Shown here in pieces: positions 44,171-64,000 of a DNA stretch of 64,000 nt; position 1 is the first letter of the stretch; each line of letters starts with the position of its first letter. The DNA is taken from contig OZ296653.1 of the NCBI GenBank assembly GCA_965655095.1, positions 6,510,001 to 6,574,000 on the forward strand, read 5' to 3'. The notes beneath the pieces were generated by a model. The model was not told where the DNA came from and did no database searches. It was given only the letters and a program-made list of their open reading frames with translations. A program made the translations under genes and the position numbers. The stretch is from Haplodiscus bocki (taxonomy: Eukaryota).

Positions 44171-44860
44171 AATATCAAGGCATGTCCTTATTATATAGAA
44201 TACCTTCGGCTTCGATATTAAGAACAACCGAAAAATGCGGGAAACCCCCGTTTCATATCGTGGTTTGTTAAATTCAATATGCGCATATGTATCTACCGCA
44301 GTTACGTACTTTTACAATTTTGACGTTTGAGGATTTTGAGGAAACGTTTACAATTTTGAGGAAAATAGTTAGGTTTGCATGCAACTGAATCCAAGTATTG
44401 TATTTAAGCAATGTAGCGGACGTAAGCACGGCACCGCACAACACACACACGCAGAAAGCGACCACACACACTGCAACCAACCCGCCACACAACGTGGCTG
44501 ATGATTTAATTTGATGTCCGAAAAAAACTCAACACATCTCCCTATAAATATCGAATGCTTTCGGCTTCGATATTTGAAACACACAAACAAATTTTGAAAA
44601 CACCCAAGAGCCCTCAGCCCCCTTACGAAGTTTTTCGGAAGTGTCAGAATTTTTCGACCAAAAATAGTGAACACCCACTTTTATGCACCTGCCTCAGGTA
44701 AAGTGAGCCTTATGGGCAGCACCAAGTTGGCTCGTTTACTTACTATCCGTTCAATAACTTTTAACTATTTATGTTCGCACTGTGTTATATTCCAAATGTA
44801 ATTCGGTTGAATCTAATTTTTTTGACAATGAAAAATAGTCATCATTGTGTGCTGGTTCAC

Positions 44861-45139
44861 CTCCGGACTCTGAGTCCAGTTCTATCATCACTGGCTCACT
44901 ATCACACATTTCAGCCATGGCGGTGACGTCACGGAATAAATAGGTTCTGGGCTTGTTTTTGTTGTTGGTTTCTTGAATGAGAAAGTTGAGGAATTTTTTT
45001 TCGTCTGTTCTGATGAATCCACTCACAGTTACAGTGTCCTCTATTTGTCCACTCTGTCTCTTAAGGGGGTCCACTTGAGTCTTGGGTACCCAGCCCCTGT
45101 TGACTAGGATCCTCAGAGGAGATTTCATTTGGCTATCCG
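44861..45139 (-). CDS. SURF1: SURF1 exon 3
   Basis: RILVNRGWVPKTQVDPLKRQSGQIEDTVTVSGFIR...FRDVTAMAE (SURF1 signature). Acceptor gtattAG|CG and donor GGA G|GTGAAC, both phase 1. Confidence 0.93.
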
Positions 45140-46283
45140 CTAATACGAATGTTGTGCAAATCAAACATATTCAACCCTCGCAAAGCAAAAAAGAATCAAA
45201 TTTACGTAAAATGCGTGATACTTTGAGAAAACAGAAAGCATTCAGCGAATGAAATTGACAAGCTTCAGAAAAAATTTGAATACATTAGTGAACAGAATAA
45301 ATTTCCAGCCACTCAGTGTTTGGAATTTTGCTTTTCTTGCCAACGTTTCGGATTTTTTTGGATTATACTAAAATTTTAGCCAAGGTCTTCGCAATTATTA
45401 TAGCCAAGAAGTCCAGGAATTTGCTTAGACTTCTTGGCAAGAGCAACAAACAATCCTGTCGTTCTTGGCAAGAGCAACAAGGTAAACTATGCACAGACAT
45501 CTTATAATTTCTTTTACAATTTATTCATTTCAAAAACTTTCTGAAACAACGGATGAAAGATTCCGAAGCATATATATGTCACCATATTATAAAATAGAAA
45601 GACCTAATTTTCACCGAAATACCGGTAACTGACCAAACAATGATTGACCAAAATTGTCAAAAACAGTACCCATTGCTAGATTGTGCGCTATCTTGTTCAA
45701 TATATCGAAACTCCTCGAAATCGAGTCGCAAATTTGTTTTTTTTATAAGCTGCTCGTAAAATGCATCACAAGTGGCTACTAGGGTACCAAGCAGTACCTT
45801 TCATTTTCAACGAAGTCGAAAATTTTAAGAAATGGGAGAATACGCTTTGTTTCCTTGCAAAAATCTTGACTTCTTTCCAAGAACTTGAAAAGTCTTGCGC
45901 GCCTTGTCAAGAATAATTGCCAAGATCTTGGCAAGAAAACCCTGGAAAACCAGGATACCAAGCACTGGGCGGGCACTCGTGGAAATTTTCGGTTACTAAC
46001 TAGCAAAGTAGAATTGAATGAACGAAATTACCACGGAATGTTTTTCACTTTAGCGCTCCGTCGGTCTCGAACATCGAATAAGGTCAATAAGGGTGGATGT
46101 TGGAAGAACTATGATTTGTGAGCGAAACTTTTTGGAAGATCAAACTCTGATTAATCAGTGGAAAAACCACTTTCACATGTTATCCCTAATTTTCTAAAAG
46201 TTTTGCTTAAGGCGTGGAAACAAAATTCCGAAGTTTTGATACCAGAGGTGTGTGGCTTTTTTCCTATTCCCGCCACATGTTAG

Positions 46284-46805
46284 TATTTTCCACCCATATT
46301 TAAAAATGGAAGGAAAATCATCCATTAAAGTGAACGTTTTTCTACGTTTCTTGCCAATTGATAATGTCCGAATGTCAGCATCCGGCAAAATGACGAAAAA
46401 GACGATTCTGAACCTAACTTTTTTAAAATCAATAAAATATACCAATTATAGCGTAGAATCTACTCAAATAGTAAGATTTCTCAAAAAGTAGTGCTATTTC
46501 TCAAAAGATACGAAATCTGGGTCTTCTTTGGAAAACAGATGCGTTTTGATTTTTGAAAAACTTGATTTTTTTTCAAAATCCTTGAAGGTGGCAAACTTGC
46601 TGTAGTATCAAATGATATATTTTTTAAAAGTGTCTTTCCAACCTTAATTGTGAAGTTTTTTGCAAAAAACCAGAAATGTTTTATATTTGGAAAAACTACA
46701 ATTTATATGAAACATATTTTTGTCAAAGAAAACCTTTTCATCCTTTGAAAAGGCAAACAAAACTAGAGGGCGGAAAATATGCCGGTGCTACCCGGCCGTC
46801 TTGTT
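46284..46805 (+). repeat. Dispersed repeat family A, copy 4
   Basis: TATTTTCCACCCATATTT ... GGGCGGAAAATATGCCGGTGCTACCCGGCCGTCTTGTT (subterminal inverted repeat plus GCCGG/CCGGC hairpin). Confidence 0.8.
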
Positions 46806-49800
46806 ACACTTACTCTGGCAAGTGTTCCACAATAAAATGCATTAGTGATGAAAACAAACGCACCAAAGCGGTCAAAACACACGTAGCCCGCCGTCTTGTT
46901 CATTTTTCAAGAAAAAATTAAAAATTTTCAAAAAGAATGGACCATTTTCGGCAAGATTATTCAACATTTCCTCATTCAACGTGCGAAATGTTTTTTATTC
47001 ATTCAAAAATCTATGTATAAAAACACTTGGTAAAATGTCCTGCGGGAAGAAAAAAACTTCCGCGCCAGCCATGCTATTACAAGCAAAATTTCGGCCGCCA
47101 AAGGCAATTGGTATTAGCGAACGAAAGAAGTAGTAGCGAAGCTATTTGCAAGTTCGAAACTTTCTGTCTATTCTAAAAACACCAAACATTTGAGAAGTGG
47201 CCCGGAGCTTGTCGTCGAATAAGTTATCATCAACGTAAAAAAGGTGTCTAATACCGTGGCTGCTTCCTTTGAAACCGCGAAACATTTCATTTACGTGGTA
47301 CTAGTTTTATCAATTAATATATTAAGTATAATGAAAATTACTTGATGATCAATTCAATTGTTAACAAGCGTGAGCGATTCATCAGAGGTAGATTTTTCAA
47401 CAGGAATCATACCCTCATTTTATAAAATTCAGACACAGGGGCGAAGCTGTGCTACGCAAACACTTGCGAAACCAACTATCACAGTGGGAAAAAATTCTAA
47501 AATAACTTAACAACGTATTCGCAGTCCCACTCAAATTTGCCACAGTTGTCACTTCTTTCGACTCAATTGCCTAAAACAACTGCTCAAAAAAGAGGCTGCA
47601 AGTAATTGAATTAGAACTGGATGGAGCTGAAACGAGTACCAGCCATTGAGAAAGACATTTCCGAACAAGCACAAAAGTATAAACTTCACGAATCTCAAAA
47701 AAATCCAGATTTTTCGAAAGTAAAAAATGAAGACAGGCCCTCCAAGATACTTTGGGACACTCTACGCCACAGGTATTTTGATCCGCGCTGCATCAAGCCA
47801 AGGCAAAAAATAGTCATGGAAGTATATTTATCGAACTACGAAGAAAAAAGCATCTTCGATATTTAGGTTTCAGGTCTAACACAAATCCGAGATAGACAAT
47901 TCGAGCAACTCCTCAGGGCCTTCAGGTCACCATTATTTGAATGAGCGCCTGATTGAAGCAATGCGATTACTAGTTACGGGGAACATTTGTTGTAACGAAC
48001 AATACGAGAAAAAGTATCTGCGATTTCTCAAAACCAAATTAAGATTTTTCGGATAAACGTATAAAAGAGACCATTCAAGCTGCTCTGCAAAACAGCTCAG
48101 ACGTGAGCAGTTTCATCGGCGCTGAAGCGAAAAACTGCGCCATCACTCACTGAGAACAGTTTCGACCAACAACCCGAAAATAACGATCATCGCCGTTTCA
48201 ATTACAAGTCGGTTCTTGGCAATAGAATTCAATATCAACAATTATAAATAGTGTGAAGTATCTCCTGTATTAAAGCAAAACGGAAAAAAATACTTTAATT
48301 TGAAGTCAGCATCGCGCAGCACTACCGAGATCAATTGAAAACGTGACATTAATCAGCACGGAAATTTGCAGTTTTGAAGCAGCGGATAAAAATGGCTGCT
48401 GAGTCCGATTGCTTATCTCAAGCATGGAAGTTCTCCGAAAACAGGCGGGACACACAACGGATTTCTTGCTGACAGTCACGAATGTCTGAGACTTGATGTT
48501 TTTAACATAACCAACGACAGTTAGTAACATTTTGACTCAAATTGATAAAAATTCGAAAGCTATAAGACGACAAACTGTTAGTAACTAAAACGTTTAATCT
48601 TCCTGATAAACATGCAATAACGGACATCCGATCAGTGGTCTTCGAAAGCATTTTTGACAAACAACGCAGCATACTCCAAGAAAAAACGGACGAAAGACGC
48701 AAGAAACCTTTGGGAGTTTGAAGTACATGTCAAGATACTTGATGAAACAAGAAAAATGAACAGACCGACTTTTTCACCCTGTAACAGTCTGATGTTCTCT
48801 GAATAGTCTAAATATTAGAAACGAAAGACTACATAGAGATTGCGACGAATTGTTTTCAAGAAGAACGCCTCTGATGAATGAGGAAAAAAGTTCTTAGGTG
48901 TCTTACCAGCTAAACTATTCTGCCAGGAAAGTTTAGACTATCCCTGCTCGCCCAAGGATCTCCCGGGCAGCTATCAGTCCATTTAACCAAGAATTGACTA
49001 CATCCGAACAATGGTCTCAAAAAACGCCTTCGACCAACAACAACTTCTTCGATTATTCAAACAGTAGTAAAGATAGTTCGGGCTGAAGGTTGAAAAAAGC
49101 CATCTTAGCCTTTTGCCAGAAAATCTCGGCAGCAACTAGATAAGTCAGCACTGGATGGACTCAATCCGACCATTAGTCATGAAGAAAAAAATGACAGACA
49201 CAAAAAACATTTCGAATATTGAGAACAAGTTTTCGGCAACAAAATTTGACAAAACGCGATCTCAGACTTTGTCAGAGACTCCCTGGACCGAGTACATGAA
49301 CCGGCACTGGATGGACCCAATTCGCACAGTAGTTTTTCACAACAACTCTTGAAGCCAAGGACGAAAGTTTTCGTGAAAAAGATATCAAACGGCTATTCCC
49401 TGACACTCCACAGGACCTTTAGATACCAAGAAATCGAATCATTGCAGGAATGACACGACCATAGCGTTCCAAAAAAACCAATTTTGACAGAATATTGCTG
49501 AAAAATTCCGTCGCTCGACTTATCAATTAGATTATCCTCAGACCTTTCGCAGAAAAGCTGTAGTTGATTCAATTCACAACGAATTTAATGTTAGTCCACG
49601 TGCACGAGAGAGGCCACGACGCTGCATGAACAAATATTTGTGACCAAAAGAAAGGGCATGAACACATTGGGTGATTACGAATTTAACAAAAATTGCGAGA
49701 GACGCACGGAAAAAAGGGAAGCCGTCCGAATACTCCAGGCAAAGAAGAATGACTCGTCGTATTTTCACTTGCAAATGTAATGCCCTGCAAGTCTCATTCT

Positions 49801-49968
49801 GCAATCCGAGACAAAAGCTTTTAAAGGATACCTTAAAACTAAAATTTCAAGCAAAAAAAAACGAACTTTTGAGCAAAAAAAGGATACCAACTGAAATTGT
49901 TTTTGCTGCCGAATCTTTTGATTCAAATTGCACAACACTATTTACTAACTTAGTTATACTCTACTAAC

Positions 49969-50193
49969 TAGAATTGAAGTTCATTCTGTGGGCGTCCTGT
50001 TCGTCGACTACGAAGGGAGTGATGACATGTGCCCCGTAGTTACCTTTGGAGGACTTGGACCCAGCTGAGAGAGTCCACTGAGAAGACTGGTGGTCTGTTT
50101 TGATTGGGTGTCTGAAATCCACGTACATCTCCTGCTCATGTTGGAACCTCCCTCGCACAAACACTCGCCGGTATTCTTCGCTCTTCAAACTGT
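49969..50193 (-). CDS. SURF1: SURF1 exon 2
   Basis: DSLKSEEYRRVFVRGRFQHEQEMYV...GAHVITPF (cf. EYRPVKVRGCFDHSKELY...GAYVVTPF). Acceptor gatattAG|AC and donor TCT A|GTTAGT, both phase 1. Confidence 0.92.
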
Positions 50194-51163
50194 CTAATAT
50201 CACATTCACATGTAAGTACAGTGTCATTTTCAATGTTATTACTGAAAAAATGATCCATTTTAATTCAAATGACTCAGTAGCTTAAATTGTTAAAGTTTCT
50301 GATTTTGAACAGATTCATCTAATAAAGAGCAGCCAAGAACCTGTCGATCTAATTCACTGACGGCACTACAAAGAGCTATTATTTGATTTGAAAATTCTTG
50401 CATTTTGGTACTGTGATCATATTAAATTTTCAAGCTTGGTCGATTTTATGCATGTGTGAACATGGATTCCTTTAAATTTTTGTTCTGCTTTAAATCGATC
50501 AAAGGCCGTTGAAAAATCAAAATGTACATCACTCTGTACACTGCAGGTCTACACGTAGGACAAATAAATTACACAACTTCAAAGAACGACTTTACAAAAA
50601 ATTCAGGCTCAAATAGGAACAAGAGGGGAAGAATTGAAGTGGAACAGTCCACTTGAAATTCTATGTCAACGAAAGATTGACGATGTTAGTTATTCAAGGA
50701 TTATATGGAAAACTTCTCAAACAGTCATTGTCTTGGGATAGGACAGGAGGTTGAGGTGCAATGTCGACATTCATAATTTTATCAAGCACATATAAGAAGC
50801 CTCTAATAAATGAAAAACTACTACGACCCCACCCGTTGCGTTTTATTCCGTGCACAGTGGGAACCAAAGTTTGCAACATCAGATGGTCCCTGTGCACAGT
50901 TTCATGTTCTGAGGCCTCATGCACAAAGTGGGTTCGAATCTCACGGAGAAGCAATAGGCTTCCGACTAAAATTTACATATCGACTACTCTTGTAGCAAAG
51001 TGGTTATATAACATACAAAAAATGTACGCGTGAAATTTTCGAATTCCCAAAGTAGACGATGTTTGTTTCGACATAGCAGCTAAATTCAATATCAGCTTTT
51101 TTCGTGAGCTAGTTAGTATTCAATGTATTAATATACTGATATTATTGCACTCTGTTACTTTAC

Positions 51164-51385
51164 CTGTGCTGAGGTTGATGTGACTGAGATGAACGGGTTC
51201 TGCATTGTATCTCTTCTTGATGTTATCAATGATCTGCAACTTCTGCTTCAGTCTCGCAATCTGCCAAGTTCCCAGACCAGTACACACCAAGGGCGCTACC
51301 ACCAAATACCGCATATGCTCATACCCCGAAGTCGACCTCTTCGCACCTTCAGCACAGCAGCAGACAGGGTTGGCAAAATCTTCAT
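51164..51385 (-). CDS. SURF1: SURF1 exon 1 (first transmembrane helix); start codon ambiguous, apparent 1-nt frameshift near 51340
   Basis: YLVVAPLVCTGLGTWQIARLKQKLQII (SURF1 GLGTWQ motif) and donor ACA G|GTAAAG (phase 1). ATG 51385 encodes a targeting-peptide-like leader in a different frame. In-frame ATGs exist at 51443 and 51314. Confidence 0.85.
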
Positions 51386-52028
51386 AATTCTTACAATCAT
51401 CAATCTGTTCGATATTTACGACACACAGTCGTATGATAAACATAAATTGACTAAACGCAAAAAATTGCCGTTTTTGGAGCTCAATGTCTCAAAAAAACTA
51501 CTACGAAGATTCCTCGAAAATGTTCGTTCTAAACAAGTAGAAAGTAACGAAGCTAAAGCCAAGTTGATTTGGTAGTTAAAAGCAAAGTTCGTCCCATTCC
51601 TCTTGTGCGAGTTTTTTTTATATCAAGACAAGCACGCCGGGAACGGCCTAAGCTGGTAGGTGTCAAATATTGTGTCGAGAAAAAATTGTCTCGCAGTACA
51701 GAAAAACATAGTAGAGTGGCTTTTGATTCATAAAAAACTCTGGGTTCCAAAGAAGTTTGATAGTGCAAGGGGGGCTATCACGACTTCAGTCGGAAAATTT
51801 GCTTCAGTAAGAAATTCGTTTTGGCCTTCTGGAAGGCTAAACTATCGGCGCATATAAGGTTCAGCATACTTCACGAGCGAGGAGCCTTTGAGTGTTGGTG
51901 AAGTTTTCGGGACATCTGTATCAGGGAAAAGTGGAACCAAAGGTCCAACATTTATTCGTAAATGGTAGGTTTTTCTTACCCTTTTTAGTATAAATGGTAA
52001 AAGAAAGCCTACAAAATTTGAATATACA

Positions 52029-52095
52029 GCCTATATTCTGGGGTTCCAACACACGACCTCTGGATTCGGAAGCGTTTTGTCATTCCAATTTGGCA
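52029..52095 (-). repeat. tRNA-derived SINE-head-like fragment (related to 15305-15368)
   Basis: Similarity by eye to the 15305 copy, including the degenerate B-box and the TATAGGC tail. Confidence 0.4.
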
Positions 52096-52419
52096 ACAGG
52101 TATGCCATTCGAGCAAAAAAGATATAATCATACAAACTGGTTCAGTTAAATTACACATAGTGGACAATCACGCGACCCAATGAAATTTGTTAATACAATC
52201 GGCTCAAAAAAACGGAGCCACTCCAATTGTCGGACTTGTTTAAACGCGACGACTAAAAACGGTATTGCGCAAAGCTTTGGCCGTCTTTAAATGAATCTGC
52301 ATAATCAAAAATTGGTGAAAACATGGTCGGACAGGTGAAACCAGCTTAAAAAAATTAGCATTTCTCTGTGACTTGTCAAATCAGAACTACTGTTTCATTC
52401 AAGTATGATTGGTTTGTAG

Positions 52420-52570
52420 ATGCCTCCGTGGAGAGTAGAGATCTGTGGACACAAGGACTCATCCAGGCTGACTGTCAGAACTTTGCCAGAGGACTCACCG
52501 AGATGCCCTCCAATCACATGAGTCCAGAAGCATTCGTGCAAGAAGTTGTCAACATGTTCGAGCAATACAG
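52420..52570 (+). CDS. Isolated M17 leucine aminopeptidase exon on the strand opposite to the LAP gene
   Basis: ggtttgtAG|...CAG|GTACC, 151 bp, open frame DASVESRDLWTQGLIQADCQNFARGLTEMPSNHMSPEAFVQEV (cf. LAP3 AWQKGVLFASGQNLARQLMETPANEMTPTRF). Whether it is expressed is unknown. Confidence 0.75.
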
Positions 52571-53709
52571 GTACCACTGATTCCTTCTCACCATTTTTAA
52601 TAGATGCTTTCACTTCGGTAAAAATGCCCAATTGTTGCGCCGACTAGTTTTTTTCACCGTGTCGAGAAATGTTTCACGAAAATGAAGAAGCAATATTTTT
52701 TGTATTCCCGAAAGTATCAATTTCGAGAACATGTTTCTACTTAAAAACTAATCCATTAACGAAATGTACGCGAGATTTTTTGTATTCCCCGAAGAGTGAC
52801 CATGACATAAAGCGGCCTTTCGATCCAAATAGTTTAAATCATTTTCCTTTCAATGATTATTCCTTTTCATCTTTGCAAAAAAGGAAGAGAATGGAACCTC
52901 ATACAAGCATTATGGCTACTGACTCTGCAACATTTCGGACCAAAAGTTTAAATTGGGCCAATTTGTTCCGATAATTAACTTTACCTAATTAGAAAACAAA
53001 CATACGCGTTTTTATCAACTTACAATTCGCCTATTCTTTTAGACGGGAAAGTTGAACGTACTTTAACATTGACTAACCTCGTGTATGCAGCGTAACGAAT
53101 AAACCAAATGATAAAAACATATTGTTTTGATCAGATTGGCAAAATGCGTGTAAACAAATGACGCAGTCACAATGCGTTCAAAATGGGTACACCTTTCAAA
53201 CTTGAATGACGTCAAAACGAAATCAATATACTAGAGACATCCTATTACATAACTTTTGAAGTCGAACAGGACAAATAACCAGCTGCACCTAATTTTAACT
53301 GACGGTTTGGAACTTGACTAAAAGAAATCAGATTCAATTTGCATCTCACTAGGACAGCAACCTTGAAGGGACTTTGATTTCTTGTCACTGGGTTTGAACA
53401 TTTTTCTAAATGGTTAGTCAGCCCTTACTCCAAATGTACTTCCGATCTCACAAAACACAGTGCCTCTTGCATTAAACTGTACAGTCAATCATGTTAATCT
53501 TCTGAAACCCAGTCCGGGAGTCTGCAAGGAGGCGTCACGACAAAAAATCAAGTATCTCTTCATATGCTTTTTTCATGTTTTTCTCAAAAACTATCGAATT
53601 AAAAAATACGAGAACTAAAGCTGAGTTATATTCAAAACAAATTTAACACAAAGAACAATTGGATATAATACAGGTGAAAGTTTAAAATACTTTACAAAAT
53701 CAAAATTGT

Positions 53710-54560
53710 TCGAGAGTCCGTTAAGCGCGAGCTCAATTTGACTGTTTTGGTAACCCTCGAGGATGTTCTTAATTGTAAGGGTATTTTTTTGGGAATTCCT
53801 TCCCCGCTTGCAAATTAATTAGTTTGTTCTTTGCCACGCTTTGTTCTCGTCGCAGAAAATCAATAAATTTGAAAATTGTAGGATAAACATATCCTAAACT
53901 TCCTTTTATGGCACGGTGCCACCCTTCAATAGCGTTTTTGGTTTTTTGGCGCATTTCTTTGGCGTTTTCAAATTGGCACCAAATTGAAGGCGCGAAGGAG
54001 GCCTCAGTTCGACTCCCTAGCTAAATTTTTCTCCCAACCGCGTAGCCTCAAAAAAACTCACTAAATCTGCAAGTTTTTCATTTGTCGTCTCGGCTGTAAA
54101 TTCCTTGAGTTCTTGAAATCCGAGAGAGATATCTTTTTCCGGGATTAGTGCAAGAGCTTCCATCCACTTCCCATTTTGCGGAGAATTCTAGTTCTTGTAA
54201 GTTTTGCCTAGTAAAAATGAAACGATTGGCATATATTTATGCGCAGCAACTCTTGCGTCGAATACGACGCACCATTGTTCTTTGATTAAGCATTTGAGCA
54301 ACTGCCTCTTCAGTTGAGTTGTTGGTTGACATCTGTACGACAACTCTCGGTGGTTCTAAGCATTGTGCAGCCCTGCTTTCTATTGCTTTTTCACTGTGTA
54401 CTAGCTCCTTTTTTGCAGGGTTGGCTTCATGGTAGTGAGGATTGGTTAAAAGAAACTCGAAAGAGCGTTCAATGGTCTTGTCAACACCTTTGCAACGTCT
54501 ATCTGTGCATCTCCACATCGCGATTGAAGTGTTTTCATTTTTCCGTTTTAGGAAGAAGCG
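53710..54560 (-). mobile_element. Second MULE/FLYWCH transposase relic with internal deletion
   Basis: WRCTDRRCKG...PHYHEANP (FLYWCH) followed closely by LALIPEKDI..GF and KTKNAIEGWHRAIK....PTIFKFIDFLRREQ (MULE C-terminus). The DGTF core is not seen. Confidence 0.85.
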
Positions 54561-57500
54561 TCAAAAAACAAAAAAAAACGAAAACACTGAGCACTTCTTA
54601 AATCTAAAAAATTTTCCGAAGTCTTCAACACAAACTTGCGTTTCTGAAGATTTTTTCCGTTTCATAATCTTTGATTGATTCCGAAAAAAAAACGGTTGTC
54701 CTCAATTCTGGACAAGTTTGTCGAAGATACAGACGGCAAAAGAAAATTTATTCGATTTGAAAAATTTGGACCAATTGCAGCCAATTTCTTAATGTCAGCT
54801 AAGCAAGTAAATATTGATCAATACTAGTTGTTAATGGCCAGAAAAAAACGTTTCCAGCATGAACACCAAATACGCTGCTGAACACCCTTGACACGGCTAT
54901 GGTCCAATTATCCCAGGAAAAATTTACGTGTGTTTGTTTTTCGCTTTCCACTAATGCCTTATGGTCATAGTGAGCTTAGGAAGCTCCTCCACTAAGCATA
55001 TTCGACAAATAAAACTTGATCAAAAAGGCTCATTGAGAGCCATCATCGATCGAAGCTGTTTTTCAAATCATACATATATATCGCATAAATATAATTGAAT
55101 TACATCAATGGATTTTCATCACCCAACCCTGGGAAGAAGACGCATCTACTGATAAGGGTCGACGCCATTTGGGGAACAGCTTGCTCACAAAAATTGAAGA
55201 GTCTTTGCAACAGAACATAGACGCCTGCCTCAATTCTCTGCCACTCATTTTGTTCATATCATACAAGTTGTCTGAAAAAAGAAATATCTATACTAATCTC
55301 TCAATTTCAACCCTCATTTTGAGACTCTTCAAAGCGCTGAAAAAATTGCAATTCTCCATGGTTAACCCATTACTTAACGACGCTTTGGGAATCAATAATT
55401 CTCCGGCGCCCGAATATAGCCACCGGTGCTTGGACTTCGAAGCGAGTGATTTGAAAGATTTGCAAATTAACCTTCAAATAGTACCGAAAAAAAGTCAATT
55501 TCAGCGCTAAGGAAGTAACAAAGTCAAAGGAGGAGTCGAGCCAACTTCACGTATTGTGATAGATAAAGACAAAGATATTGAACAAAAAAGTTGAAAAAGC
55601 ATGTATAAAAAGGGAAGTGTAAAAACCTCATTTTAAAAAACTAGAACATATCTTGTATTACCTAGCATCCGACAAAAACAAACGGCCACTAAATTAATGA
55701 TGAAGATTTCAGCGATAGACTAGATAACCACAGAGGCAAAACGAATTATTACAAAAAAAATTATAATAACATAAACGAAGTCGGATTGAAACTCAATCTT
55801 TACCGCAGTTGACAATTCATTCCACTGAAATCTTCCGAGCTTCTCAGCTGAAAATATAGGCCACAAATAGTTGAATCACCTCTAGAAGGGTTGAATTCGA
55901 AGTGTCAATGAAAAAATCATTTTTGATAAAAGTCTTGAATTTAACAAAAAAAAATCCTATCCGTAGAAAAATTCAAAAATAGGCTCCAGCTACTCCACAG
56001 ACACTCTAGATGGCCAGAAAGTGAATTAGCGCCCGACTGAGCGAATCCGACCAATATTCGTTGACCACAACAAGTTTATCGAACGAAAGCAAACGCGTCC
56101 TCAATTTTTCTTGAATTCCAGTCGAGATGTCGCAACAAAATCCAAACAAAAGCGTTCAAAGCTAATAAACAGGAACTTTAGAACGAAATTGATTGAGACA
56201 GCGCTACTTGGACACAATCCGGAATAGCAAAGAAACTTGCAGTTATGTACGGTCGGAAAAAGTCTCGGCTTTTCCCGATTCCAAGACTCTTGCTGGACTG
56301 CAAGATTTCCAAGCGGCGCAGAATATTCTACTCATCTTCTCCGGCTTTCTAATCACAAGTCGAACTATTTTGAGCGGGAATAATATTATAATGTAATTTT
56401 TTCTCAAAAACTTGAAATAAAAGCATCCAGCATGCTAGGCAATAAGAGCCATGAAATGAGAAAGGTGAAAACGGAAAAGGGAAATTTAGCAAAAATCAAC
56501 TGATAATACCGAAGAATAAAAAAATGCAAATTAAATGGACTAATCAAGTTATTTGAATCAAACACTACACCTACTGAAAAAAGCAACAAGCGAATGATGA
56601 TGTAAAGAGCCATAAAATGTACTGGATTGAATTTTTCTAATAACTGAACTATATCTATCTACTTCAGAGCCATCCACGAATCCATTTGCAAACAGGCACG
56701 AGTAAGCCATAGAAGAAAAGGAAAAATTAGCCTTTAAGCTTATCAGCTTAATGCTCAAAAAGAGTCATCAGATATTAATGTAAAAGGAGCAATTTTTCCA
56801 GCTTTTCCCCAAAAGGGTAGCTAAAAGCTCATAGATAACTTTGTATTCCCAAAGCTCCTTTAAAAGGTCTGTCTCGGTTCGACAAAATTGAAGCTCTTTT
56901 CAGAAAAGGTTGAAATATATACGGTAGTAAAGAAGCTGAAATGGGAAATTCAGCGGAGAATTATGATTTTGCGACGTTTTCTTCAACAAAAACAGAGCCA
57001 ATATTCAGTTGTTCAGATAGCAAAGATAGTTGGAAGTGGGAGCATTCCACTAATTCTGCGAAAGAAAAAGTGATTGAATGTTCTTAACTCGTCAAAGATA
57101 CCTCACGCTGCCTATATTCTGCTCCTTTTACTTTCAACTGGGAAAAATTAAGGTCCTTGATTATTTGCCGGCATAAAACTCTGAATAAAGTCAAAAAATG
57201 CTTTCTCCCCGATATTTCCTTCGAAAACTCCCAACAAACACAAGCAGACGACCAAAAACTCAATAACCAGAGTTATAAAATTTAATGCATGGAATAAGGT
57301 AGATTCTAGAATCTGTGAAAAAAAGCAAGTCTTTGGATGAATTTTCAAGGTTTGCATTGACAAAAAGATGTCTTCAGAAGATGGAAAACATTGAAGAAAC
57401 CTCGAATTGTTTCTAAATCATATCTAACGGTGTTGAGGAAAGTTTCAAGATTATTTTCTCGCTGGAAAGATTATAAATTTAAAATATCTTTTCAGCCGTG

Positions 57501-59076
57501 GTGAAAAAATAATAGGAGCGTGTCGAAAAAAGTTTCCACCACACAGTCTGGAAGAAGCAAATCTGAACTGATTTTTAGTAGATAGGGTGCAGAGAAAGAC
57601 TGCCGTCATGACTTTGATTGAGCGCGCTTTGTTAGTAGTGCGCAAATTGATTGATTGAACGCTACCTGCAAAAAGTTCAAATTTTGAAAGGATAAAGCAA
57701 TCTCCACTCGAGCAAAAAAAAACGATTTTGTACCGGTTCTTCTTTGGAAACACACAAAATTCCCAATTCAGATAAAAGATAAATATTCTCTGAAAAAACT
57801 ATATTTTATCAGTTTCAACTGTCCGAAAAAAGTGTTGCCCACCTGCTCCTAAAGGTAAATAGGCCGGGAGATAAAAGTGTTTCGAAAAAAAAAACGATTA
57901 TCCGCCAGCACGAGAAATACAATATTTCAAAATGTTTCGTATAAAAAATCCATGGCGGAGTCTTCGAAAAAAAATTCGGCAGGAAAGTAGCTCATCATGC
58001 AAATTTTTGTATGAAAAAAATTTTAGGTACCACAATCCTACTCGGAGATAGAGATGTTTCAAAAAATTACGAGATGACACGTTTTCTGCGAAAATTCCAT
58101 TCGCTCGAAGCCTTGAAAAGACTTAGAAGCTGGTTTCAATAACATATGCTTCCCTTCCTTCAAAATGTGTAAAAACAGTATTAGAGACTTTCAAATGTTC
58201 AAAAATCAATTTTTCCATGCGTAGAGGAAAGGCTTAAAGCATTTTTTGGGGAAAATTTCAAATTTTACATGTTTTGTGCATGGTGAAGTTTTTTCAGACG
58301 AAGTCCGAGGATGTTGAGAGAATGAGAAATGGTGACGACAAAATACTACCAGCCATTACGCGCTGCATTGGAGTCGCCTCGCAGTAAGTTGAACCAAACC
58401 TGATTTAAGGAAAGAGCAAATTTCACAAAGTCACATTACAACCACAATTGCTGCGATGTAGCCGAGCGTGTCTGCAAAAAGGTCAAGTGATAGTGTGATG
58501 ACATCGATATCAAAAATGGGATGTTAGATCAGAAAATGAAAGTCTCGAAAAAGCCTTTTAGTACTAGCCTATCGAGCACCAGGATCCTCCAGAATAATTT
58601 GCATTGCACTAAAATTTTACGAAAACTTAAAAAAGAAATAAAAAACTCTATAGTAACATTTTTTTACTGAAATGAAGATCCGATCGAAAAGTATAACATC
58701 ACAGTTTTGAAAAAAAAAAGAAAACTTAGAGTAGCGAGATTTGAATCTAGACACTTTTTTTTATTCTCCTTTCAGTCCGGATACCGTGGGTGAAGTTTGC
58801 GAAAAATTCAGTAATTTATATTAACCTTTTTATTCTTTGACCGTATTTCAAAAAGTTTTGAAATATCAATACAATCATTCAATTTCATTTGCATTCAAAT
58901 CAATTTTTTCAGAAACAAAATCAAAAATCATATTCTGGTTCGCTTAGCCAGCAGTAAATGAAAGAAAATAAATTTAATACTTTCGAAAAAATGGCAAAGA
59001 ATGAAAGATAGAAATTCAGTTTTGCTGGCACCTCTGAAAATGCAACAAGAAAAGTTCTTAGCTTCAACGATTCTGT

Positions 59077-59419
59077 TCACGTGCTTGTAGAACTAGAGCT
59101 GAAATAGTTTTTGCAGAATTCAATCATAGTCCGTGTGGGTCTCCCGCTCATACCCTTGCCAGTGCCCCCCAGAAGGTTTGATGATTCGGAGGCAGGGGGG
59201 TGGTTGTAGACTCCAGCTATGTCGAGATGGGCCCAGTGGGGACACTTCACAAACTGGGACAGGAAGGCGGCCGCGGTACAGGCTCCCCCGTCTCTGGAAC
59301 CAGATGCACCCTTGGCGGTGTTGATGACGTCAGCAAGGGTAGAATTGGTGACTTGGTCCACGTAATAAGTACTCAAGGGCATTCGCCACACCTGGTCCCC
59401 TGTCACGTGACCACTCTTC
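59077..59419 (-). CDS. LAP3: M17 cytosol/leucine aminopeptidase, last coding exon
   Basis: TGDQVWRMPL...ADVIN...GGACTAAAFLSQFVKCPHWAHLDIAGV...GMSGRPTRTMIEF. Acceptor tttcttcAG|G (phase 2) matches the upstream donor. Confidence 0.93.
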
Positions 59420-59899
59420 CTGAAGAAATAGAAAAAATAGAAAATACAAAATTAGAGAATCGTTTCTTCAATACCTTGGCAAAAATACCTTAATGATTTT
59501 AGTTCAGTCAAGCCATGTCTGAAGTGTAGTTTTTTCAAATATTTGTTGCTGTCAAGTTTTTGGGAATCAGAATGTTCATGTTTCATGATGACTTTTCACT
59601 TGGATGATTAACTAGTGAACATGCAGTGTGCTATCGCCAGTTTGAGCTCATGAAAATACACACAAAAGTCCAAGAAAACTTCACTATTCACTAAAATGCT
59701 TCTGTAGAAAAATGTCGTAGGAAATTCTAGATTTTTCTAGATTTCTCCATCTCATACTTTCACATGAATTTGCACTTTGCTAGAGAATAACCATGATCGT
59801 TACAAAATGAAAACCGATCATAAGAATTTTGAACAATTAACTGCCTGTCAGCCTTTACACTTTTTGCGCAAATGCTTCATTGAGACATGGTAAATGAGA

Positions 59900-60652
59900 C
59901 ACAGAGGCGAAGCAGAGATTCGCAACACATTCTGACCTGTTAGTTGAGATCAGAAATCTTAAACAAATCAAAAGCCCTGAGAGACATTTGAACCTTGATG
60001 GGATACACCATTGACAATTTCCAAAATACTACACCAGAGGTCCGTCAAAAAGTTGTTGGAAAAATTGAATTGAAACAAGAACCTGTAACAGTGTCTGATA
60101 CTCGAAAAGTTGATCTGTCAATCACGGCTTTTTAGATTCTTTATTTTGCGGCCCAATCTTCAAAAGACTTACGCAACAAACAACGCCAAAAAATAAACGA
60201 CACTATGTGTCGTATAAAAAATTACATGAAAAACTTCAAGCACCAAATGGCCAATGCTGTCAACAAGAGGTTAAAACAACTTCAAAAGTTTTTTTCATTT
60301 CCGATGTCTTCCTTACTAAAATTAACCATTGTCAGAGCTATAAAATTTTACAAGTAATGTTTTTTGGGGACAACTAATACATTACCCACACTGTCTAATA
60401 TTCAGAACATTGTCATGTGAAACATTAATCTTTAGAACGCAGTTGTTAATTTTTCAAAACAATGCTTTGAAACTTTGCACAGTTCAGGACGCGAAAAAAA
60501 ACAAGTCCCTGCCAACATTTTTGAAAAGGGCCATTTTTGACCGTCCACACTAGATGGCTCTTTTGATGACGTCACAAAATGAAAATTTTAGGCAGGATGG
60601 AAACTATGCAAAAGCCTATCAATACAAATTCTTCCTTTCAGTCAGAATGTGT
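59900..60652 (-). repeat. Dispersed repeat family B, copy 3 (longer, internal insertion) in the LAP intron
   Basis: AGAGGCGAAGCAGAGATTCGCAACACATTCTGAC ... TTTCAGTCAGAATGTGT. Confidence 0.75.
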
Positions 60653-61135
60653 TTAAAAAAATCAGTCATATCGCTCGGACCGAAATGAGAAAACGTTCAA
60701 TATTTCAAGTGAACGTTTGCTAATTCCCTTATGCATAAGGCGTTTCCTGAAAATATCTTCAACGGTCAATTTTCGAAAACTCCACGTGCTGTCTCAATGG
60801 ACCTGTGATCTTCAGGTAACGAAGTATTCATTAGTTTCCGATACATCGGATGCGCCAAACGAAAAACTTTCAAAGAAAACCGTAAAAACAGCTTAAAAAA
60901 CAGGAGTCAAAGATGCTAAGCATTGAGCACTGGGAATTTAGCAGAGTAAAAAAATGGAAAAGAGCCACAATTATCAAAATTTGATACCTAATTTTGAAGA
61001 AGCAGCAAGATGCGACTTAAAAGGACTAATTTGAAGAATATTTAAATCAATTGTTCGAGGAGTCAATAAAGCGCGGAAGAAGCCACAGAGTGAAGGGGAA
61101 TATTTACTTCGAATCGAGAGAATTAAAAACAAATA

Positions 61136-62252
61136 GGAGGAAGGAATAAGATCTAATCAGCAAAGTGGACTAAAATATAATGGAATAAGATCTGAAGGTA
61201 ATCATTTCGAGAAAAAGATCTAATGGAATAAGATCTGAGGGACTATGATCTAATCGGAGAAGATCTGTGGAAAAAAGATCTAATGTATTAAAATCTGAGA
61301 TAATGAGACCTCGTACATCTCAAATATCGATATTATCAGCCAAGATCAATCAGCTGACAAAATTTCAGATCAACATGAGCAATGAATTCATTTCAAAAAG
61401 ATGCACAAATAATGCAAAGATAATACAAAAATTATTCGAATAAAATACATTGGAGCAAAAATGACAAAAACCATTGTAAATCGCCAAAACCAATTACCAT
61501 GTTATTGCGAACTGAATATTCATGCCGTCGTTGTGAATTGGATACGATGAAGGCATAGAACATAGGAATTAAAACGTCAGAAAACAAAATGCATCATTAG
61601 CCTCAGGTAATTTTTTTGGCAAAATTCTAGAAGTATCATCCGTGTCTGAATAACGGACATATTTTGCATCTGCTGACAAGTCATTTTACCGGAAAACAGT
61701 AGAAAAAAATCATCAGCGACTTTGCCCATTTCGCTAAAACGCGGTGCAATTGCTGCAGATCTCCTTAAAGAGCATTTTTGAATCCTTCAGGATTTGCGGG
61801 TATGGGAGGTAAATTGTTTTTCCTGCGCTTGATCAATGCCCATTTCAGTTTCAAAAAAAAAGTTGAATATTGGAGTACAGGGCCGCAAAAATGTCATAGC
61901 TGTGAGGTGTGAAAGTTGAAACTGCAGTTGAACTTTTCTCGACTTCGGACACCCAGGTTTCATGTTGGCATTTAATATTTCCATAGAAACGGTTTTCTTG
62001 GATGAAAGCAAAGCCTTTACAGCCATCTCACATCGAAGGCCCTTAATCTATTTAGGGCTTCGGAATCGTTTTTCGTATAAATGAAACCTTCAAAACCAAA
62101 ATTGACTGAGCCTCTTACTTCTTCAAAATTTGACATTGCAAAATTTCCCGCATGAATTAGATCTTATTCCACGTTAGATCTTGTTCAACCACAGTGCAAC
62201 TGACCTTGTCAAAATTTTAGACACTATTCCATTAGATCTTATTCCACCCTCC
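61136..62252 (-). mobile_element. Foldback-type MULE derivative with tandem GGAATAAGATCTAAT subterminal repeats
   Basis: Left end GGAGGAAGGAATAAGATCTAAT with arrays at 61136-61285; right end ATTAGATCTTATTCCACCCTCC with inverted units at 62156-62252. Internal FLYWCH-like remnant EGFIYTKN...RCE/DGCKG. TSD is imperfect. Confidence 0.75.
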
Positions 62253-62982
62253 AAATACAAATGAATGAGAATAAGTAAAAATTAGTTCGCTTCACTCTCT
62301 CACTCAGTCAGTTAGTCACGAATCAATTTCCAAAAAGAGCGAAGCAGCACGAAAATGCGAAGAAAATGAACTCTTGCTACGAGCTTAATGCCCAAAAATT
62401 TCTCGGAGAGTATTGAGCGTAGAGTAATCCCACAGCGAATTAATGAATTATCTCATGACTGCTTCGTTCTGTATGACATTTCAGAATTTGAAACAAGAAG
62501 ACCAAGCGTAACAGAGTCAAAATAACCACGGGGATCCCCTTCTTTCAGTGCTGAAAATTTTGCAAAGCCATTTGATAGGCCTTACAAAGTCTATTGTTCC
62601 AAGTTTTTCAGGACACCATTTTCTCCAAATAGTATGTAATAATGAGTATCGGGAGAAAAAGTAAAGCGGAGCGAACAATTGGTCATCGACGCTCTGAAAA
62701 AAAAACGAAATTCATTGCAATAATCGGGTACGTTTCTTTCGGAAAGCGAAAGTTCAAAAGGAGTAAAAGCCTCCAGCAATCACTAAATTCCTGAAAAATG
62801 ATGCGCCCATGGTTGGAATTATTTACACGTTTTAACCTCAACTCTTCCAGATGTCTACCGCTTCGGCGAATATTGGAAATAAAAAACGTTTAAGGCAGGA
62901 ACCAAGTACGCAACGGCGTAAGAACTGCGTGAGCTCTAGGAGCATTGAACAAAAAGTTGTTGAAAGGGTGGCGGCAGCTCAC

Positions 62983-63284
62983 TTGAGATTGTCGAATAAT
63001 TTGTTGGTGGTGCAGAAGGTTCCAGTGAATGCAGCCCCGAGAGAGACCACCATGGCTCCAGTGAGAGTGGCCATGTCAACCACCGCACCGGGCTTGAATG
63101 AGTCACTGTAGTCCAACACATCGGCCAGCACTACTCTTCCCTCCGCATCCGTGTTGTCTATCTCTATCGATTTGCCACTCCTCGACACGATGACGTCACC
63201 CGGCTTGTATGCTGTGCCTGAGGGCATGTTTTCGCAAAGACCCATTAGACACACTAGTCTGCCGTGCACGTTCAACCTCATGGC
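62983..63284 (-). CDS. LAP3: M17 cytosol/leucine aminopeptidase, penultimate coding exon (catalytic NTDAEGR motif)
   Basis: CENMPSGTAYKPGDVIVSRSGKSIEIDNTDAEGRVVLADVL...DMATLTGA. Acceptor ggattcAG|GCC and donor CTC AA|GTGAGC. Confidence 0.95.
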
Positions 63285-64000
63285 CTGAATCCAAAACCGC
63301 ACATAAAGCATTTAATGAAAGCAATCATGAAGTGGCAACTCCAAAATATGTGACGAAAAGAAACTCCCATCTTAATACATTCATTCAAACTAAATTCAGA
63401 ATTGTACACTTTTCATCTGCAATAATTTTATCCCTCCCTAAAAGTTTAAAGCAAACATTGCTGTAAAATAAAGAACTTTCAAAGAAGTGTTTGAGATTAC
63501 TTTTTTAAGAAATTTCCAATTTTTTCAGAATTACGCAAAATTACGTGTCCATTTATTCACAATAAGTTGCCTTCCCTCCTCAAGCAACTGTAAAGGACAT
63601 GTTCACACCAAGGGTACTTTCAAATGTCCCACTTTTGAGTCATAGCTCTTCCAGCTTCATTCAAGTTCGATGCAATTTCACCGACAAGTACAAGAAACTT
63701 AACATTTTTTGTGAGCAATCTTCAAAAACGAAACTTGATTACAAATAACTCGTTTATATCTATTTCCTTGTCGGTTATTTGGAGAGCTTTTTAGTAGCAG
63801 TTTGATGATTGTAATTTTAATTGAAGAGTTGTGTTCAGTTACAGCAACAGTCTTTTCAAGTATTGCACAGTAGAGACTCCAAGGCAGTGCTGTCCCTTCA
63901 AATAATTGTTTTAAAACAAGTTTAGAATTTTTAAATCAGAACGTTTCGTTTAAAAAGCGAAAGTTCAAAACTTCGCTGTTTAAACCATGATTGAAACACA

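What the first reader, a model, noticed from the sequence alone, without database searches (positions are those of the whole stretch)
52420..52570. Intact leucine-aminopeptidase exon on the opposite strand, downstream of its own gene
Seen: a 151-bp + strand exon with canonical AG/GT ends, no stops and clear M17 similarity (W..G....CQNFAR.LTEMPSNHMSP..F). Known: in LAP3 this segment starts the catalytic domain, well N-terminal of the NTDAEGR and WAHLDIAG segments, which here lie on the minus strand at 63284-62983 and 59419-59077. The exon is therefore inverted and out of order, 6.5 kb beyond the LAP stop and ~1 kb from the SURF1 start in divergent orientation. I found no other + strand LAP exon in the window, and nearby non-genic DNA is heavily decayed while this exon is clean. 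Inference, four options: (a) a split gene completed by trans-splicing from the opposite strand, as in Drosophila mod(mdg4), perhaps transcribed from a bidirectional SURF1 promoter; (b) a recent inverted exon duplication or an inversion breakpoint; (c) one exon of an interleaved antiparallel paralogue with very long introns; (d) local misassembly.
Basis: partly seen in the sequence, partly recalled or inferred. Interest (0 to 1): 0.75.

Follow-up and report, generated by a model that had tools for sequence, protein, structure and literature searches.

The report
Leucine aminopeptidase gene scrambled by inversions
The stray exon is real and is the only copy found of exon 3 of this worm's leucine aminopeptidase gene; the gene's six intact exons now lie in three pieces on both strands, so it was either recently broken by inversions or is assembled from separate RNAs.

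Summary
Window 52420-52570 (+) is a clean 151-bp exon with AG/GT ends that encodes the start of the M17 catalytic domain.

I read past the window on an ENA contig that is 100% identical to the window over 19.8 kb. The gene has six exons:
- Exons 1-2 lie about 184 kb upstream of exons 4-6, on the same (minus) strand.
- Exon 3, the finding, lies 6.5 kb beyond the stop codon, inverted, about 1 kb from SURF1 exon 1.

No second exon 3 appears in the 28.8 kb after exon 2 or the 10 kb before exon 4. In five loci from related species the same exons are collinear.

Joined in order, the six exons give one open 541-codon LAP3-like frame. All splice sites are canonical, all phases fit, and all 49 near-invariant residues are kept. 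Skipping exon 3 gives a stop at codon 184.

Inverted copies of a 1.07-kb repeat bound the exon 4-6 block, and a Polinton-like element begins 1.7 kb after exon 2.

Best reading: two nested inversions scrambled the gene. Duplication, an antiparallel paralogue and misassembly are poorly supported. No RNA data could be reached, so I could not tell a recent break from an eri-6/7-like trans-splicing rescue.

The parts
52420..52570 (+). Exon 3 of the LAP3-like M17 gene, 151 nt. It starts with 2 nt of a split codon and ends with 2 nt. Acceptor AG at 52418-52419, donor GT at 52571-52572. It encodes the start of the catalytic domain.
62983..63284 (-). Exon 5 (NTDAEGR metal and catalytic motif), Pfam Peptidase_M17 positions 121-221 of 310.
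59077..59419 (-). Exon 6, the last exon (WAHLDIAG, stop codon TGA), Pfam Peptidase_M17 positions 228-310 of 310.
53482..54549 (.). Solo copy of the 1.07-kb repeat R. It is inverted relative to a tandem array of at least 8 R units (period 1156) that starts 1.8 kb upstream of exon 4, at window-equivalent 67719-75980. The solo copy and the array bound the 13.2-kb exon 4-6 block.
52900..54700 (.). High-copy repeat zone. K-mer depth is 50-250 times that of the single-copy flanks. Short unitigs cannot bridge it.
51120..51443 (-). SURF1 exon 1 (profile positions 2-41), divergent from exon 3 and about 1 kb away. The breakpoint of the large inversion is inferred to lie between 51443 and 52420.
49964..50233 (-). 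SURF1 exon 2.

Best explanation
The 151-bp segment is the genuine exon 3, and the only copy I could find, of a six-exon LAP3-like M17 aminopeptidase gene that genomic rearrangement has scrambled.

Shown:
- Exons 1-2 lie on the minus strand about 184 kb upstream of exons 4-6.
- Exon 3 lies 6.5 kb beyond the stop codon on the plus strand, next to SURF1.
- Relatives have all these exons collinear.
- The exon 4-6 block is bounded by inverted copies of a 1.07-kb repeat.

Inferred: two nested inversions produced this layout. The first, about 198 kb, had one breakpoint in the short exon 2/exon 3 intron and the other just upstream of SURF1. It turned exons 3-6 around. The second, about 13 kb and bounded by the repeat copies, turned exons 4-6 back and left exon 3 alone inverted.

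One collinear transcript cannot produce the mRNA from this layout, and skipping exon 3 shifts the frame. I think the layout is most likely a young and possibly polymorphic break, and that exon 3 is a stranded, still undecayed exon rather than part of a dedicated mechanism. That last step is the weakest.
For: Layout beyond the window:
- ENA contig ctg88737 (loci L003, L004, L005) is 100% identical to window 44237-64000.
- Exon 4 is at window-equivalent 65618-65912 (-).
- Exons 1-2 are on the same contig at record 82598-83410, 184.5 kb upstream of exon 4 on the same strand.

No second exon 3:
- None in the 28.8 kb after exon 2.
- None in the 10 kb before exon 4.

Relatives: five loci (L001, L002, L007-L009) have exon 2, 3, 4, 5, 6 collinear, with an exon 2/3 intron of 0-400 bp.

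The pieces complement one another:
- Pfam matches tile without overlap: M17_N 66-128, then M17 1-26, 32-118, 121-221 and 228-310.
- The conceptual join is one 541-codon ORF aligning to profile positions 30-521 of 560.

Repeats and mobile elements:
- Inverted R copies bound exons 4-6.
- A Polinton-like element with several 730-bp terminal-repeat copies starts 1.7 kb after exon 2.

DNA support: unitigs from two samples chain without a break from SURF1 exon 2 through exon 3 to 53015, and run from 54693 onwards on the other side.

Against a dedicated trans-splicing design: the intron halves show no complementarity beyond chance.
Against: - All six exons and all ten splice sites are intact.
- All 49 columns that are at least 97% conserved in 191 homologues are kept.
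- The solo repeat differs from the array units by about 4%, spread evenly. If that divergence dates the inversion, a dead gene should already carry lesions. This argues for continued selection and therefore for some way of making the mRNA.
- No second LAP3-like gene of this genome surfaced, though the searches were limited.
- 146 kb between exon 2 and the array was not read.
- The far side of the array may be misjoined, because its units are up to 99.8% alike.
- The large inversion has no repeat or other footprint at its inferred breakpoints.
Confidence: 0.6

Rival explanations
1. The gene still works as a split gene. Separate pre-mRNAs are joined by spliceosomal trans-splicing: exons 1-2, exon 3 from the plus strand (perhaps driven by the divergent SURF1 promoter), and exons 4-6. 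This would resemble C. elegans eri-6/7 after its inversion, but with an internal exon supplied in trans, which needs two trans events.
For: - The join is a perfect 541-codon frame with compatible phases (exon 2 ends ..C and exon 3 starts AT.., giving His; exon 3 ends ..AG and exon 4 starts A, giving Arg), and all sites are canonical.
- No conserved residue is lost.
- dN/dS of exon 3 is at most 0.2, like the other exons.
- Earlier notes of this scan call the genome an acoel. SL trans-splicing affects 30% of genes in the acoel S. roscoffensis (PMC9911081).
- eri-6/7 is a precedent for rescue of an inverted gene part (PMC11414722).
- A plus-strand transcript running on from exon 3 would be antisense to exons 6-4 and could pair with their pre-mRNA. 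This is inference.
Against: - No RNA evidence at all. The four runs found were DNA.
- Two trans-splicing events around a 151-nt internal exon have, to my knowledge, no precedent in animals.
- The repeats are inverted in the DNA, so they read in the same sense in the two RNAs and cannot pair.
- No other complementarity lies near the splice sites.
- dS to the relatives is saturated, so the low dN/dS cannot tell recent relaxation from constraint.
Confidence: 0.15
2. Exon 3 at 52420 is a duplicated copy. The working exon 3 sits in the unread 146 kb between the Polinton-like element and the repeat array, and the gene is cis-spliced across giant introns.
For: - Part of the interval was not read (record 112.2-257.8 kb).
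- In one sample the unitig over exon 3 has about 1.5-2.3 times the depth of its flanks.
Against: - In relatives exon 3 follows exon 2 within 0-400 bp. Here there is none in 28.8 kb, including 1.1 kb beyond the far end of the Polinton-like element, and none in the 10 kb before exon 4.
- The second sample shows no excess depth.
- A 184-kb intron would be about 70 times the 2.5-kb mean reported for an acoel genome (PMC9911081).
Confidence: 0.08
3. Assembly artefact. The exon 4-6 block or its surroundings were placed in the wrong orientation at the repeats.
For: - The block is bounded by repeats present 50-250 times in the genome.
- Array units are up to 99.8% alike.
- Short unitigs do not bridge 53015-54693.
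- The ENA contig may come from the same reads as the window's assembly.
Against: - The solo repeat zone is only 1.8 kb and 96% like the array, which long accurate reads span easily.
- A separately deposited contig-level record is identical over window-equivalent 44237-75981.
- The SURF1-exon 3 adjacency lies in single-copy DNA and is seen in two samples. Flipping the block would make exons 3-6 collinear but would still not bring exon 3 next to exon 2.
Confidence: 0.07
4. Exon 3 belongs to an interleaved antiparallel M17 paralogue on the plus strand with very long introns.
For: None beyond the strand of the exon.
Against: - No other plus-strand M17 piece lies in the 64-kb window or the 12 kb beyond it.
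- Exon 3 fits the minus-strand exons exactly in phase and in domain tiling.
Confidence: 0.01

Closest known systems
C. elegans eri-6/7 (gene split by a Polinton-associated inversion, repaired by trans-splicing; PMC11414722)
   Same: - A single collinear gene in relatives.
- Part of the gene now lies on the opposite strand.
- Repeats bound the inverted block.
- A Polinton-like element with several terminal-repeat copies sits in the broken intron.
- The host lineage has SL trans-splicing.
- The exons stay intact.
   Different: - Three pieces here, not two, with an internal exon displaced.
- The pieces are up to 198 kb apart.
- The repeats are inverted in the DNA, so the RNAs are not complementary, whereas eri-6/7 uses direct repeats that pair.
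- No Polinton remnant lies next to exon 3.
- No RNA evidence that the pieces are joined.
Human F8 intron-22 inversion (recombination between an intronic repeat and inverted copies outside the gene; from my own knowledge)
   Same: One repeat copy lies inside what was an intron and inverted copies lie outside the flipped block. The result is a gene whose exons are intact but no longer collinear.
   Different: Here the repeat copies are only about 96% alike, with no long identical tract. A breakpoint inside a former array explains the layout as well as homologous recombination does. A second, larger inversion is also needed.
Drosophila mod(mdg4) and lola trans-splicing
   Same: Exons of one mRNA are encoded on both strands of one locus.
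   Different: There, alternative 3' exon sets are joined to a common 5' part in one trans event, as a conserved design. Here a constitutive internal exon is displaced in one lineage only.
Giardia split genes (Hsp90, dynein heavy chains) joined by trans-splicing (from my own knowledge)
   Same: One protein is encoded in several distant pieces, each with splice sites.
   Different: The Giardia intron halves carry long complementary stretches. None is present here.

Membership tests
M17 leucyl aminopeptidase (LAP3-like) gene | Peptidase_M17 catalytic domain covered end to end, with the M17 N-terminal domain before it | tested here: met
   Pfam matches tile across the exons: M17_N 66-128 of 129 (exon 2), then M17 1-26, 32-118, 121-221 and 228-310 of 310 (exons 3-6). 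The joined ORF aligns to my full-length profile at 30-521 of 560, E 3e-169.
M17 leucyl aminopeptidase (LAP3-like) gene | Metal-binding and catalytic motifs (VGKG..FD.GG..IKP, MRGDMGGAA, NTDAEGR) and other near-invariant residues | tested here: met
   The motifs can be read in exons 4 and 5. All 49 columns at least 97% conserved in 191 homologues are kept.
Genic trans-spliced split gene (eri-6/7, mod(mdg4) type) | Pieces lie in separate transcription units, on opposite strands or far apart | tested here: met
   Exons 1-2 and 4-6 are on the minus strand, 184 kb apart. Exon 3 is on the plus strand.
Genic trans-spliced split gene (eri-6/7, mod(mdg4) type) | Intact donor and acceptor sites and compatible phases at the broken junctions | tested here: met
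   Exon 2 donor C|GTAAGC, exon 3 acceptor AG|AT and donor AG|GTACCA, exon 4 acceptor CAG|A. The frame is kept across both joins.
Genic trans-spliced split gene (eri-6/7, mod(mdg4) type) | A mature mRNA that joins the pieces | not testable with these tools
No transcript-derived protein of this species turned up.
Genic trans-spliced split gene (eri-6/7, mod(mdg4) type) | Sequences that pair the pre-mRNAs (direct repeats in eri-6/7, complementary intron halves in Giardia) | tested here: not met
   The best complementary stretch is 11 nt, equal to shuffled controls, within 1-1.8 kb of the sites. The R copies read in the same sense in both RNAs.
Repeat-bounded inversion (recombination between inverted repeats) | Inverted copies of one repeat at both ends of the inverted block | tested here: met
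   The solo R at 53482-54549 is inverted relative to the array at window-equivalent 67719-75980.
Repeat-bounded inversion (recombination between inverted repeats) | A long tract of near-identity, or a chimeric copy, marking the exchange | tested here: inconclusive
   Identity is about 96% with mismatches spread evenly, and the longest identical tract is 87 bp. The solo copy is closest to the most distal array unit read. That also fits a breakpoint inside a former array.
Duplicated exon or pseudo-exon | A second copy of the exon in the normal position | tested here: not met
   None in the 28.8 kb after exon 2 or the 10 kb before exon 4, by profile, tblastn and blastn. 146 kb remains unread.

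The most novel reading that the evidence does not exclude
An essential-type metabolic enzyme gene in an acoel is encoded in three dispersed pieces and is rebuilt at the RNA level. A 151-nt internal exon, transcribed from the opposite strand beside the SURF1 promoter, would be inserted between exons 2 and 4 by two trans-splicing events. This would be an eri-6/7-like rescue carried one step further, in a second animal lineage that has spliced-leader trans-splicing.
Probability: 0.12. Interest if true: 0.9.

Novelty: new member of a known kind. Interest (0 to 1): 0.55.

Why it matters
A gene whose exons are all intact but can no longer be read from one transcript has one of two histories. It may be a very young loss of a normally conserved housekeeping enzyme. 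Or it may be a natural case of a rearrangement repaired by RNA trans-splicing, so far documented for very few animal genes, with eri-6/7 the clearest. The locus makes that question directly testable, because only two junction sequences need to be looked for in RNA reads. It also adds a case in which satellite-like repeats and a Polinton-like element sit at the edges of gene-breaking rearrangements. For annotation, gene predictors will report this locus as fragments, so it should be flagged.

Tried and rejected
- **Second copy in the window.** Self-comparison by tblastn and blastn for a second exon 3, or for plus-strand copies of exons 5 and 6: none. A weak minus-strand match at 52324-52280 to the DYSDSFKPG stretch of exon 5 (E 0.49) is taken as chance.
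- **Own proteins of this species.** A profile-plus-word search for a full-length or transcript-derived LAP protein of this species: none among the listed hits. A search with exon 2+3 peptides for a second exon 3 ORF found only unrelated fragments.
- **RNA evidence.** The single run search returned four runs of unknown kind. Laid on 49900-55899 they proved to be DNA: even cover of introns and no splice joints.
- **Pairing between intron halves.** A blastn-short test against shuffles showed nothing above chance.
- **Shared repeats at the large inversion's breakpoints.** No repeat is shared between the exon 2 side and the window or array side.
- **Published acoel spliced leader.** The 32-nt sequence (PMC9911081) has no copy in the window or loci, so I did not verify the species.
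- **Nature of repeat R.** My guess that it derives from a transposase gene got no Pfam support.
- **RNA genes.** tRNA and Rfam scans around the exon found nothing.
- **dN/dS.** Synonymous sites are saturated against all relatives, so the break cannot be dated this way.
- **SURF1 exon 1 ORF.** It is not on record as a called gene.

Full report
**1. The observation.**

Window 52420-52570 (+) is preceded by a pyrimidine-rich tract ending in AG and followed by GT. Its third frame is open for all 49 full codons. The peptide matches M17 proteins at four levels:
- bovine lens leucine aminopeptidase residues 149-187, E 4e-4;
- the first 26 positions of Pfam Peptidase_M17;
- a profile I built from 191 full-length M17 proteins, E 2e-8, in a six-frame scan;
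- the orthologous segment of related species, E 1e-18 and 62-69% identity.

SURF1 exon 1 is at 51120-51443 on the minus strand. Nothing else in the window resembles M17 on either strand.

**2. Reading beyond the window.**

The 110-residue ORF over exon 5 is on record as a called gene on a 685-kb ENA contig, ERZ26859043 ctg88737. Loci L003, L004 and L005 from that contig are 100% identical to the window over 44237-64000, in reverse orientation. Record coordinate equals 333811 minus window coordinate.
- Exon 4 (Pfam M17 positions 32-118) lies at window-equivalent 65618-65912 on the minus strand, with a CAG acceptor.
- Upstream of exon 4 come 1.8 kb of unique DNA and then a tandem array of at least eight units (period 1156), reaching past the end of the fetched DNA.
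- No exon 3 lies in those 10 kb.

**3. Finding exons 1 and 2.**

A word search with the exon 2 peptides of two relatives returned a 122-residue ORF on the same contig. It lies at record 83134-83502, on the same strand as exons 4-6. The DNA there shows:
- exon 1 (ATG ... CAG|GTAAGC, L006 9465-9751);
- exon 2 (L006 10030-10277, donor C|GTAAGC, Pfam M17_N positions 66-128).

Exon 2 therefore ends 184.5 kb upstream of exon 4. It is 197.8 kb from exon 3, which is on the other strand. Two further hops along the contig (L010, L011) showed no exon 3 in the 28.8 kb after exon 2.

That stretch is filled by a Polinton/Maverick-like element:
- it carries an integrase core, fragments of a protein-primed polymerase B, and a weak A32-type ATPase hit;
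- it has 730-bp inverted terminal repeats about 19 kb apart;
- extra terminal-repeat copies occur, the first only 1.7 kb after exon 2.

About 146 kb (record 112.2-257.8 kb) was not read.

**4. Relatives.**

Five loci from other samples carry the same gene with the exons collinear on one strand: L001, L002, L007, L008 and L009. The exon 2/3 intron is 0 to about 400 bp. The scrambled order is therefore derived in this genome.

**5. The pieces still make one gene.**

Joined 1-2-3-4-5-6 (in a script only), the exons give 1626 nt with a single stop at the end.
- The 541-residue product aligns over positions 30-521 of the 560-position profile and is 43-49% identical to fish and mussel LAP3.
- The phases fit at both broken joins: exon 2 ends ..C and exon 3 starts AT.., giving His; exon 3 ends ..AG and exon 4 starts A, giving Arg.
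- Leaving exon 3 out gives a stop at codon 184.
- All 49 columns at least 97% conserved in 191 homologues are kept.
- The Pfam matches of the exons tile without gap or overlap.
- dN/dS of exon 3 against relatives is at most 0.2, like the other exons. Synonymous sites are saturated, so this says nothing about recent history.

**6. How the layout arose (inference).**

The solo repeat R at 53482-54549 is inverted relative to the array upstream of exon 4. The two bound a 13.2-kb block holding exons 6, 5 and 4.

Two nested inversions from the collinear ancestor reproduce everything seen:
- The first, about 198 kb, runs from the exon 2/3 intron to a point just upstream of SURF1. It puts exons 3-6 on the other strand, with exon 3 beside SURF1.
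- The second, bounded by the R copies, turns exons 4-6 back.

The second inversion may have arisen by recombination between inverted R copies or by a break inside a former array. The copies are only about 96% alike, with no identical tract above 87 bp, and the solo copy is most like the most distal unit read. I cannot choose between the two routes. I found no footprint of the first inversion.

**7. Is the assembly right?**

The four public runs that hold the exon are DNA from two samples of one study.
- Their unitigs chain without a break from SURF1 exon 2 through exon 1 and exon 3 to 53015, and run again from 54693 onwards.
- Depth shows that 52900-54700 is repeated 50-250 times in the genome, so these unitigs do not bridge it.
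- Linkage across that 1.8-kb zone rests on the two long-read records, which agree but may share reads.
- Array units are up to 99.8% alike, so the distance of 184 kb is less certain than the local order.

Even if the 13-kb block were flipped, exon 3 would still be far from exon 2.

**8. What it does now.**

The layout cannot yield the mRNA from one collinear transcript. That leaves two possibilities.

*A young, perhaps polymorphic, break.* This is the simpler reading. In its favour:
- rebuilding the mRNA would need two trans events around a short internal exon;
- there is no pairing sequence;
- the R copies read in the same sense in the two RNAs.

*Rebuilding in trans.* In its favour:
- every exon and splice site is perfectly preserved;
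- earlier notes of this scan call the genome an acoel, and SL trans-splicing is reported for the acoel S. roscoffensis (PMC9911081);
- C. elegans eri-6/7 is a precedent, where a Polinton-associated inversion of part of a gene is repaired by trans-splicing (PMC11414722).

The scan's earlier notes call this genome an acoel. I did not verify that, and the published leader has no copy in the window.

**9. Verdict.**

The best-supported reading is an inversion-scrambled gene whose exon 3 is the original and only copy found. Duplication, an antiparallel paralogue and misassembly are unlikely. Trans-splicing is open and is the reason the locus deserves an RNA check.

Noticed in passing
window 53482-54549; L004 1-8262: A 1,068-bp repeat unit occurs once in the window and as a tandem array of at least 8 units (period 1156, units 96-99.8% alike) just beyond it. 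K-mer depth suggests 50-250 copies genome-wide. Its ORFs (93, 61 and 48 aa) have no Pfam match.
   Followed up: partly
L011 1131-1857 and 20525-21253; L006 12000-20369; L010: A Polinton/Maverick-like element of about 20 kb with 730-bp inverted terminal repeats (93% alike), an rve integrase, pieces of a protein-primed polymerase B and a weak Pox_A32-like ATPase hit. There is also a 4-kb partial duplication of its polymerase end. It begins 1.7 kb downstream of LAP exon 2.
   Followed up: partly
L003 7400-7420 (window-equivalent about 65892-65912, minus strand): Exon 4 has an in-frame ATG five codons after its acceptor. A spliced-leader mRNA of exons 4-6 alone could therefore encode a catalytic-domain-only protein starting MRLEVKIRNEEW. 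This is speculative and untested.
   Followed up: no
window 52689-52770: An 80-bp deletion variant is seen in one DNA run (X3), between two copies of a short direct repeat (TTTTGTATTCCC at 52695 and 52775). Several SNPs flank exon 3 (52133-52328, 52600, 52800-52841), but none of the listed ones falls inside it.
   Followed up: partly
window 51246: In two runs of one sample, a contig matches up to 51246, inside SURF1 exon 1, and then continues for more than 255 nt with unrelated sequence (CAGCAGGGAGTTTTC...). That sequence is absent from the window and all fetched loci. It may be a paralogous fragment or a structural variant.
   Followed up: partly
window 34050-36000: A GC-rich stretch (0.47 against about 0.37) holds decayed LINE ORFs: endonuclease-like and reverse-transcriptase-like pieces. 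Ordinary.
   Followed up: partly
L006 7087-8661: Two ORFs with reverse-transcriptase (RVT_1) hits lie 0.8-2.4 kb upstream of LAP exon 1, on the same strand.
   Followed up: no
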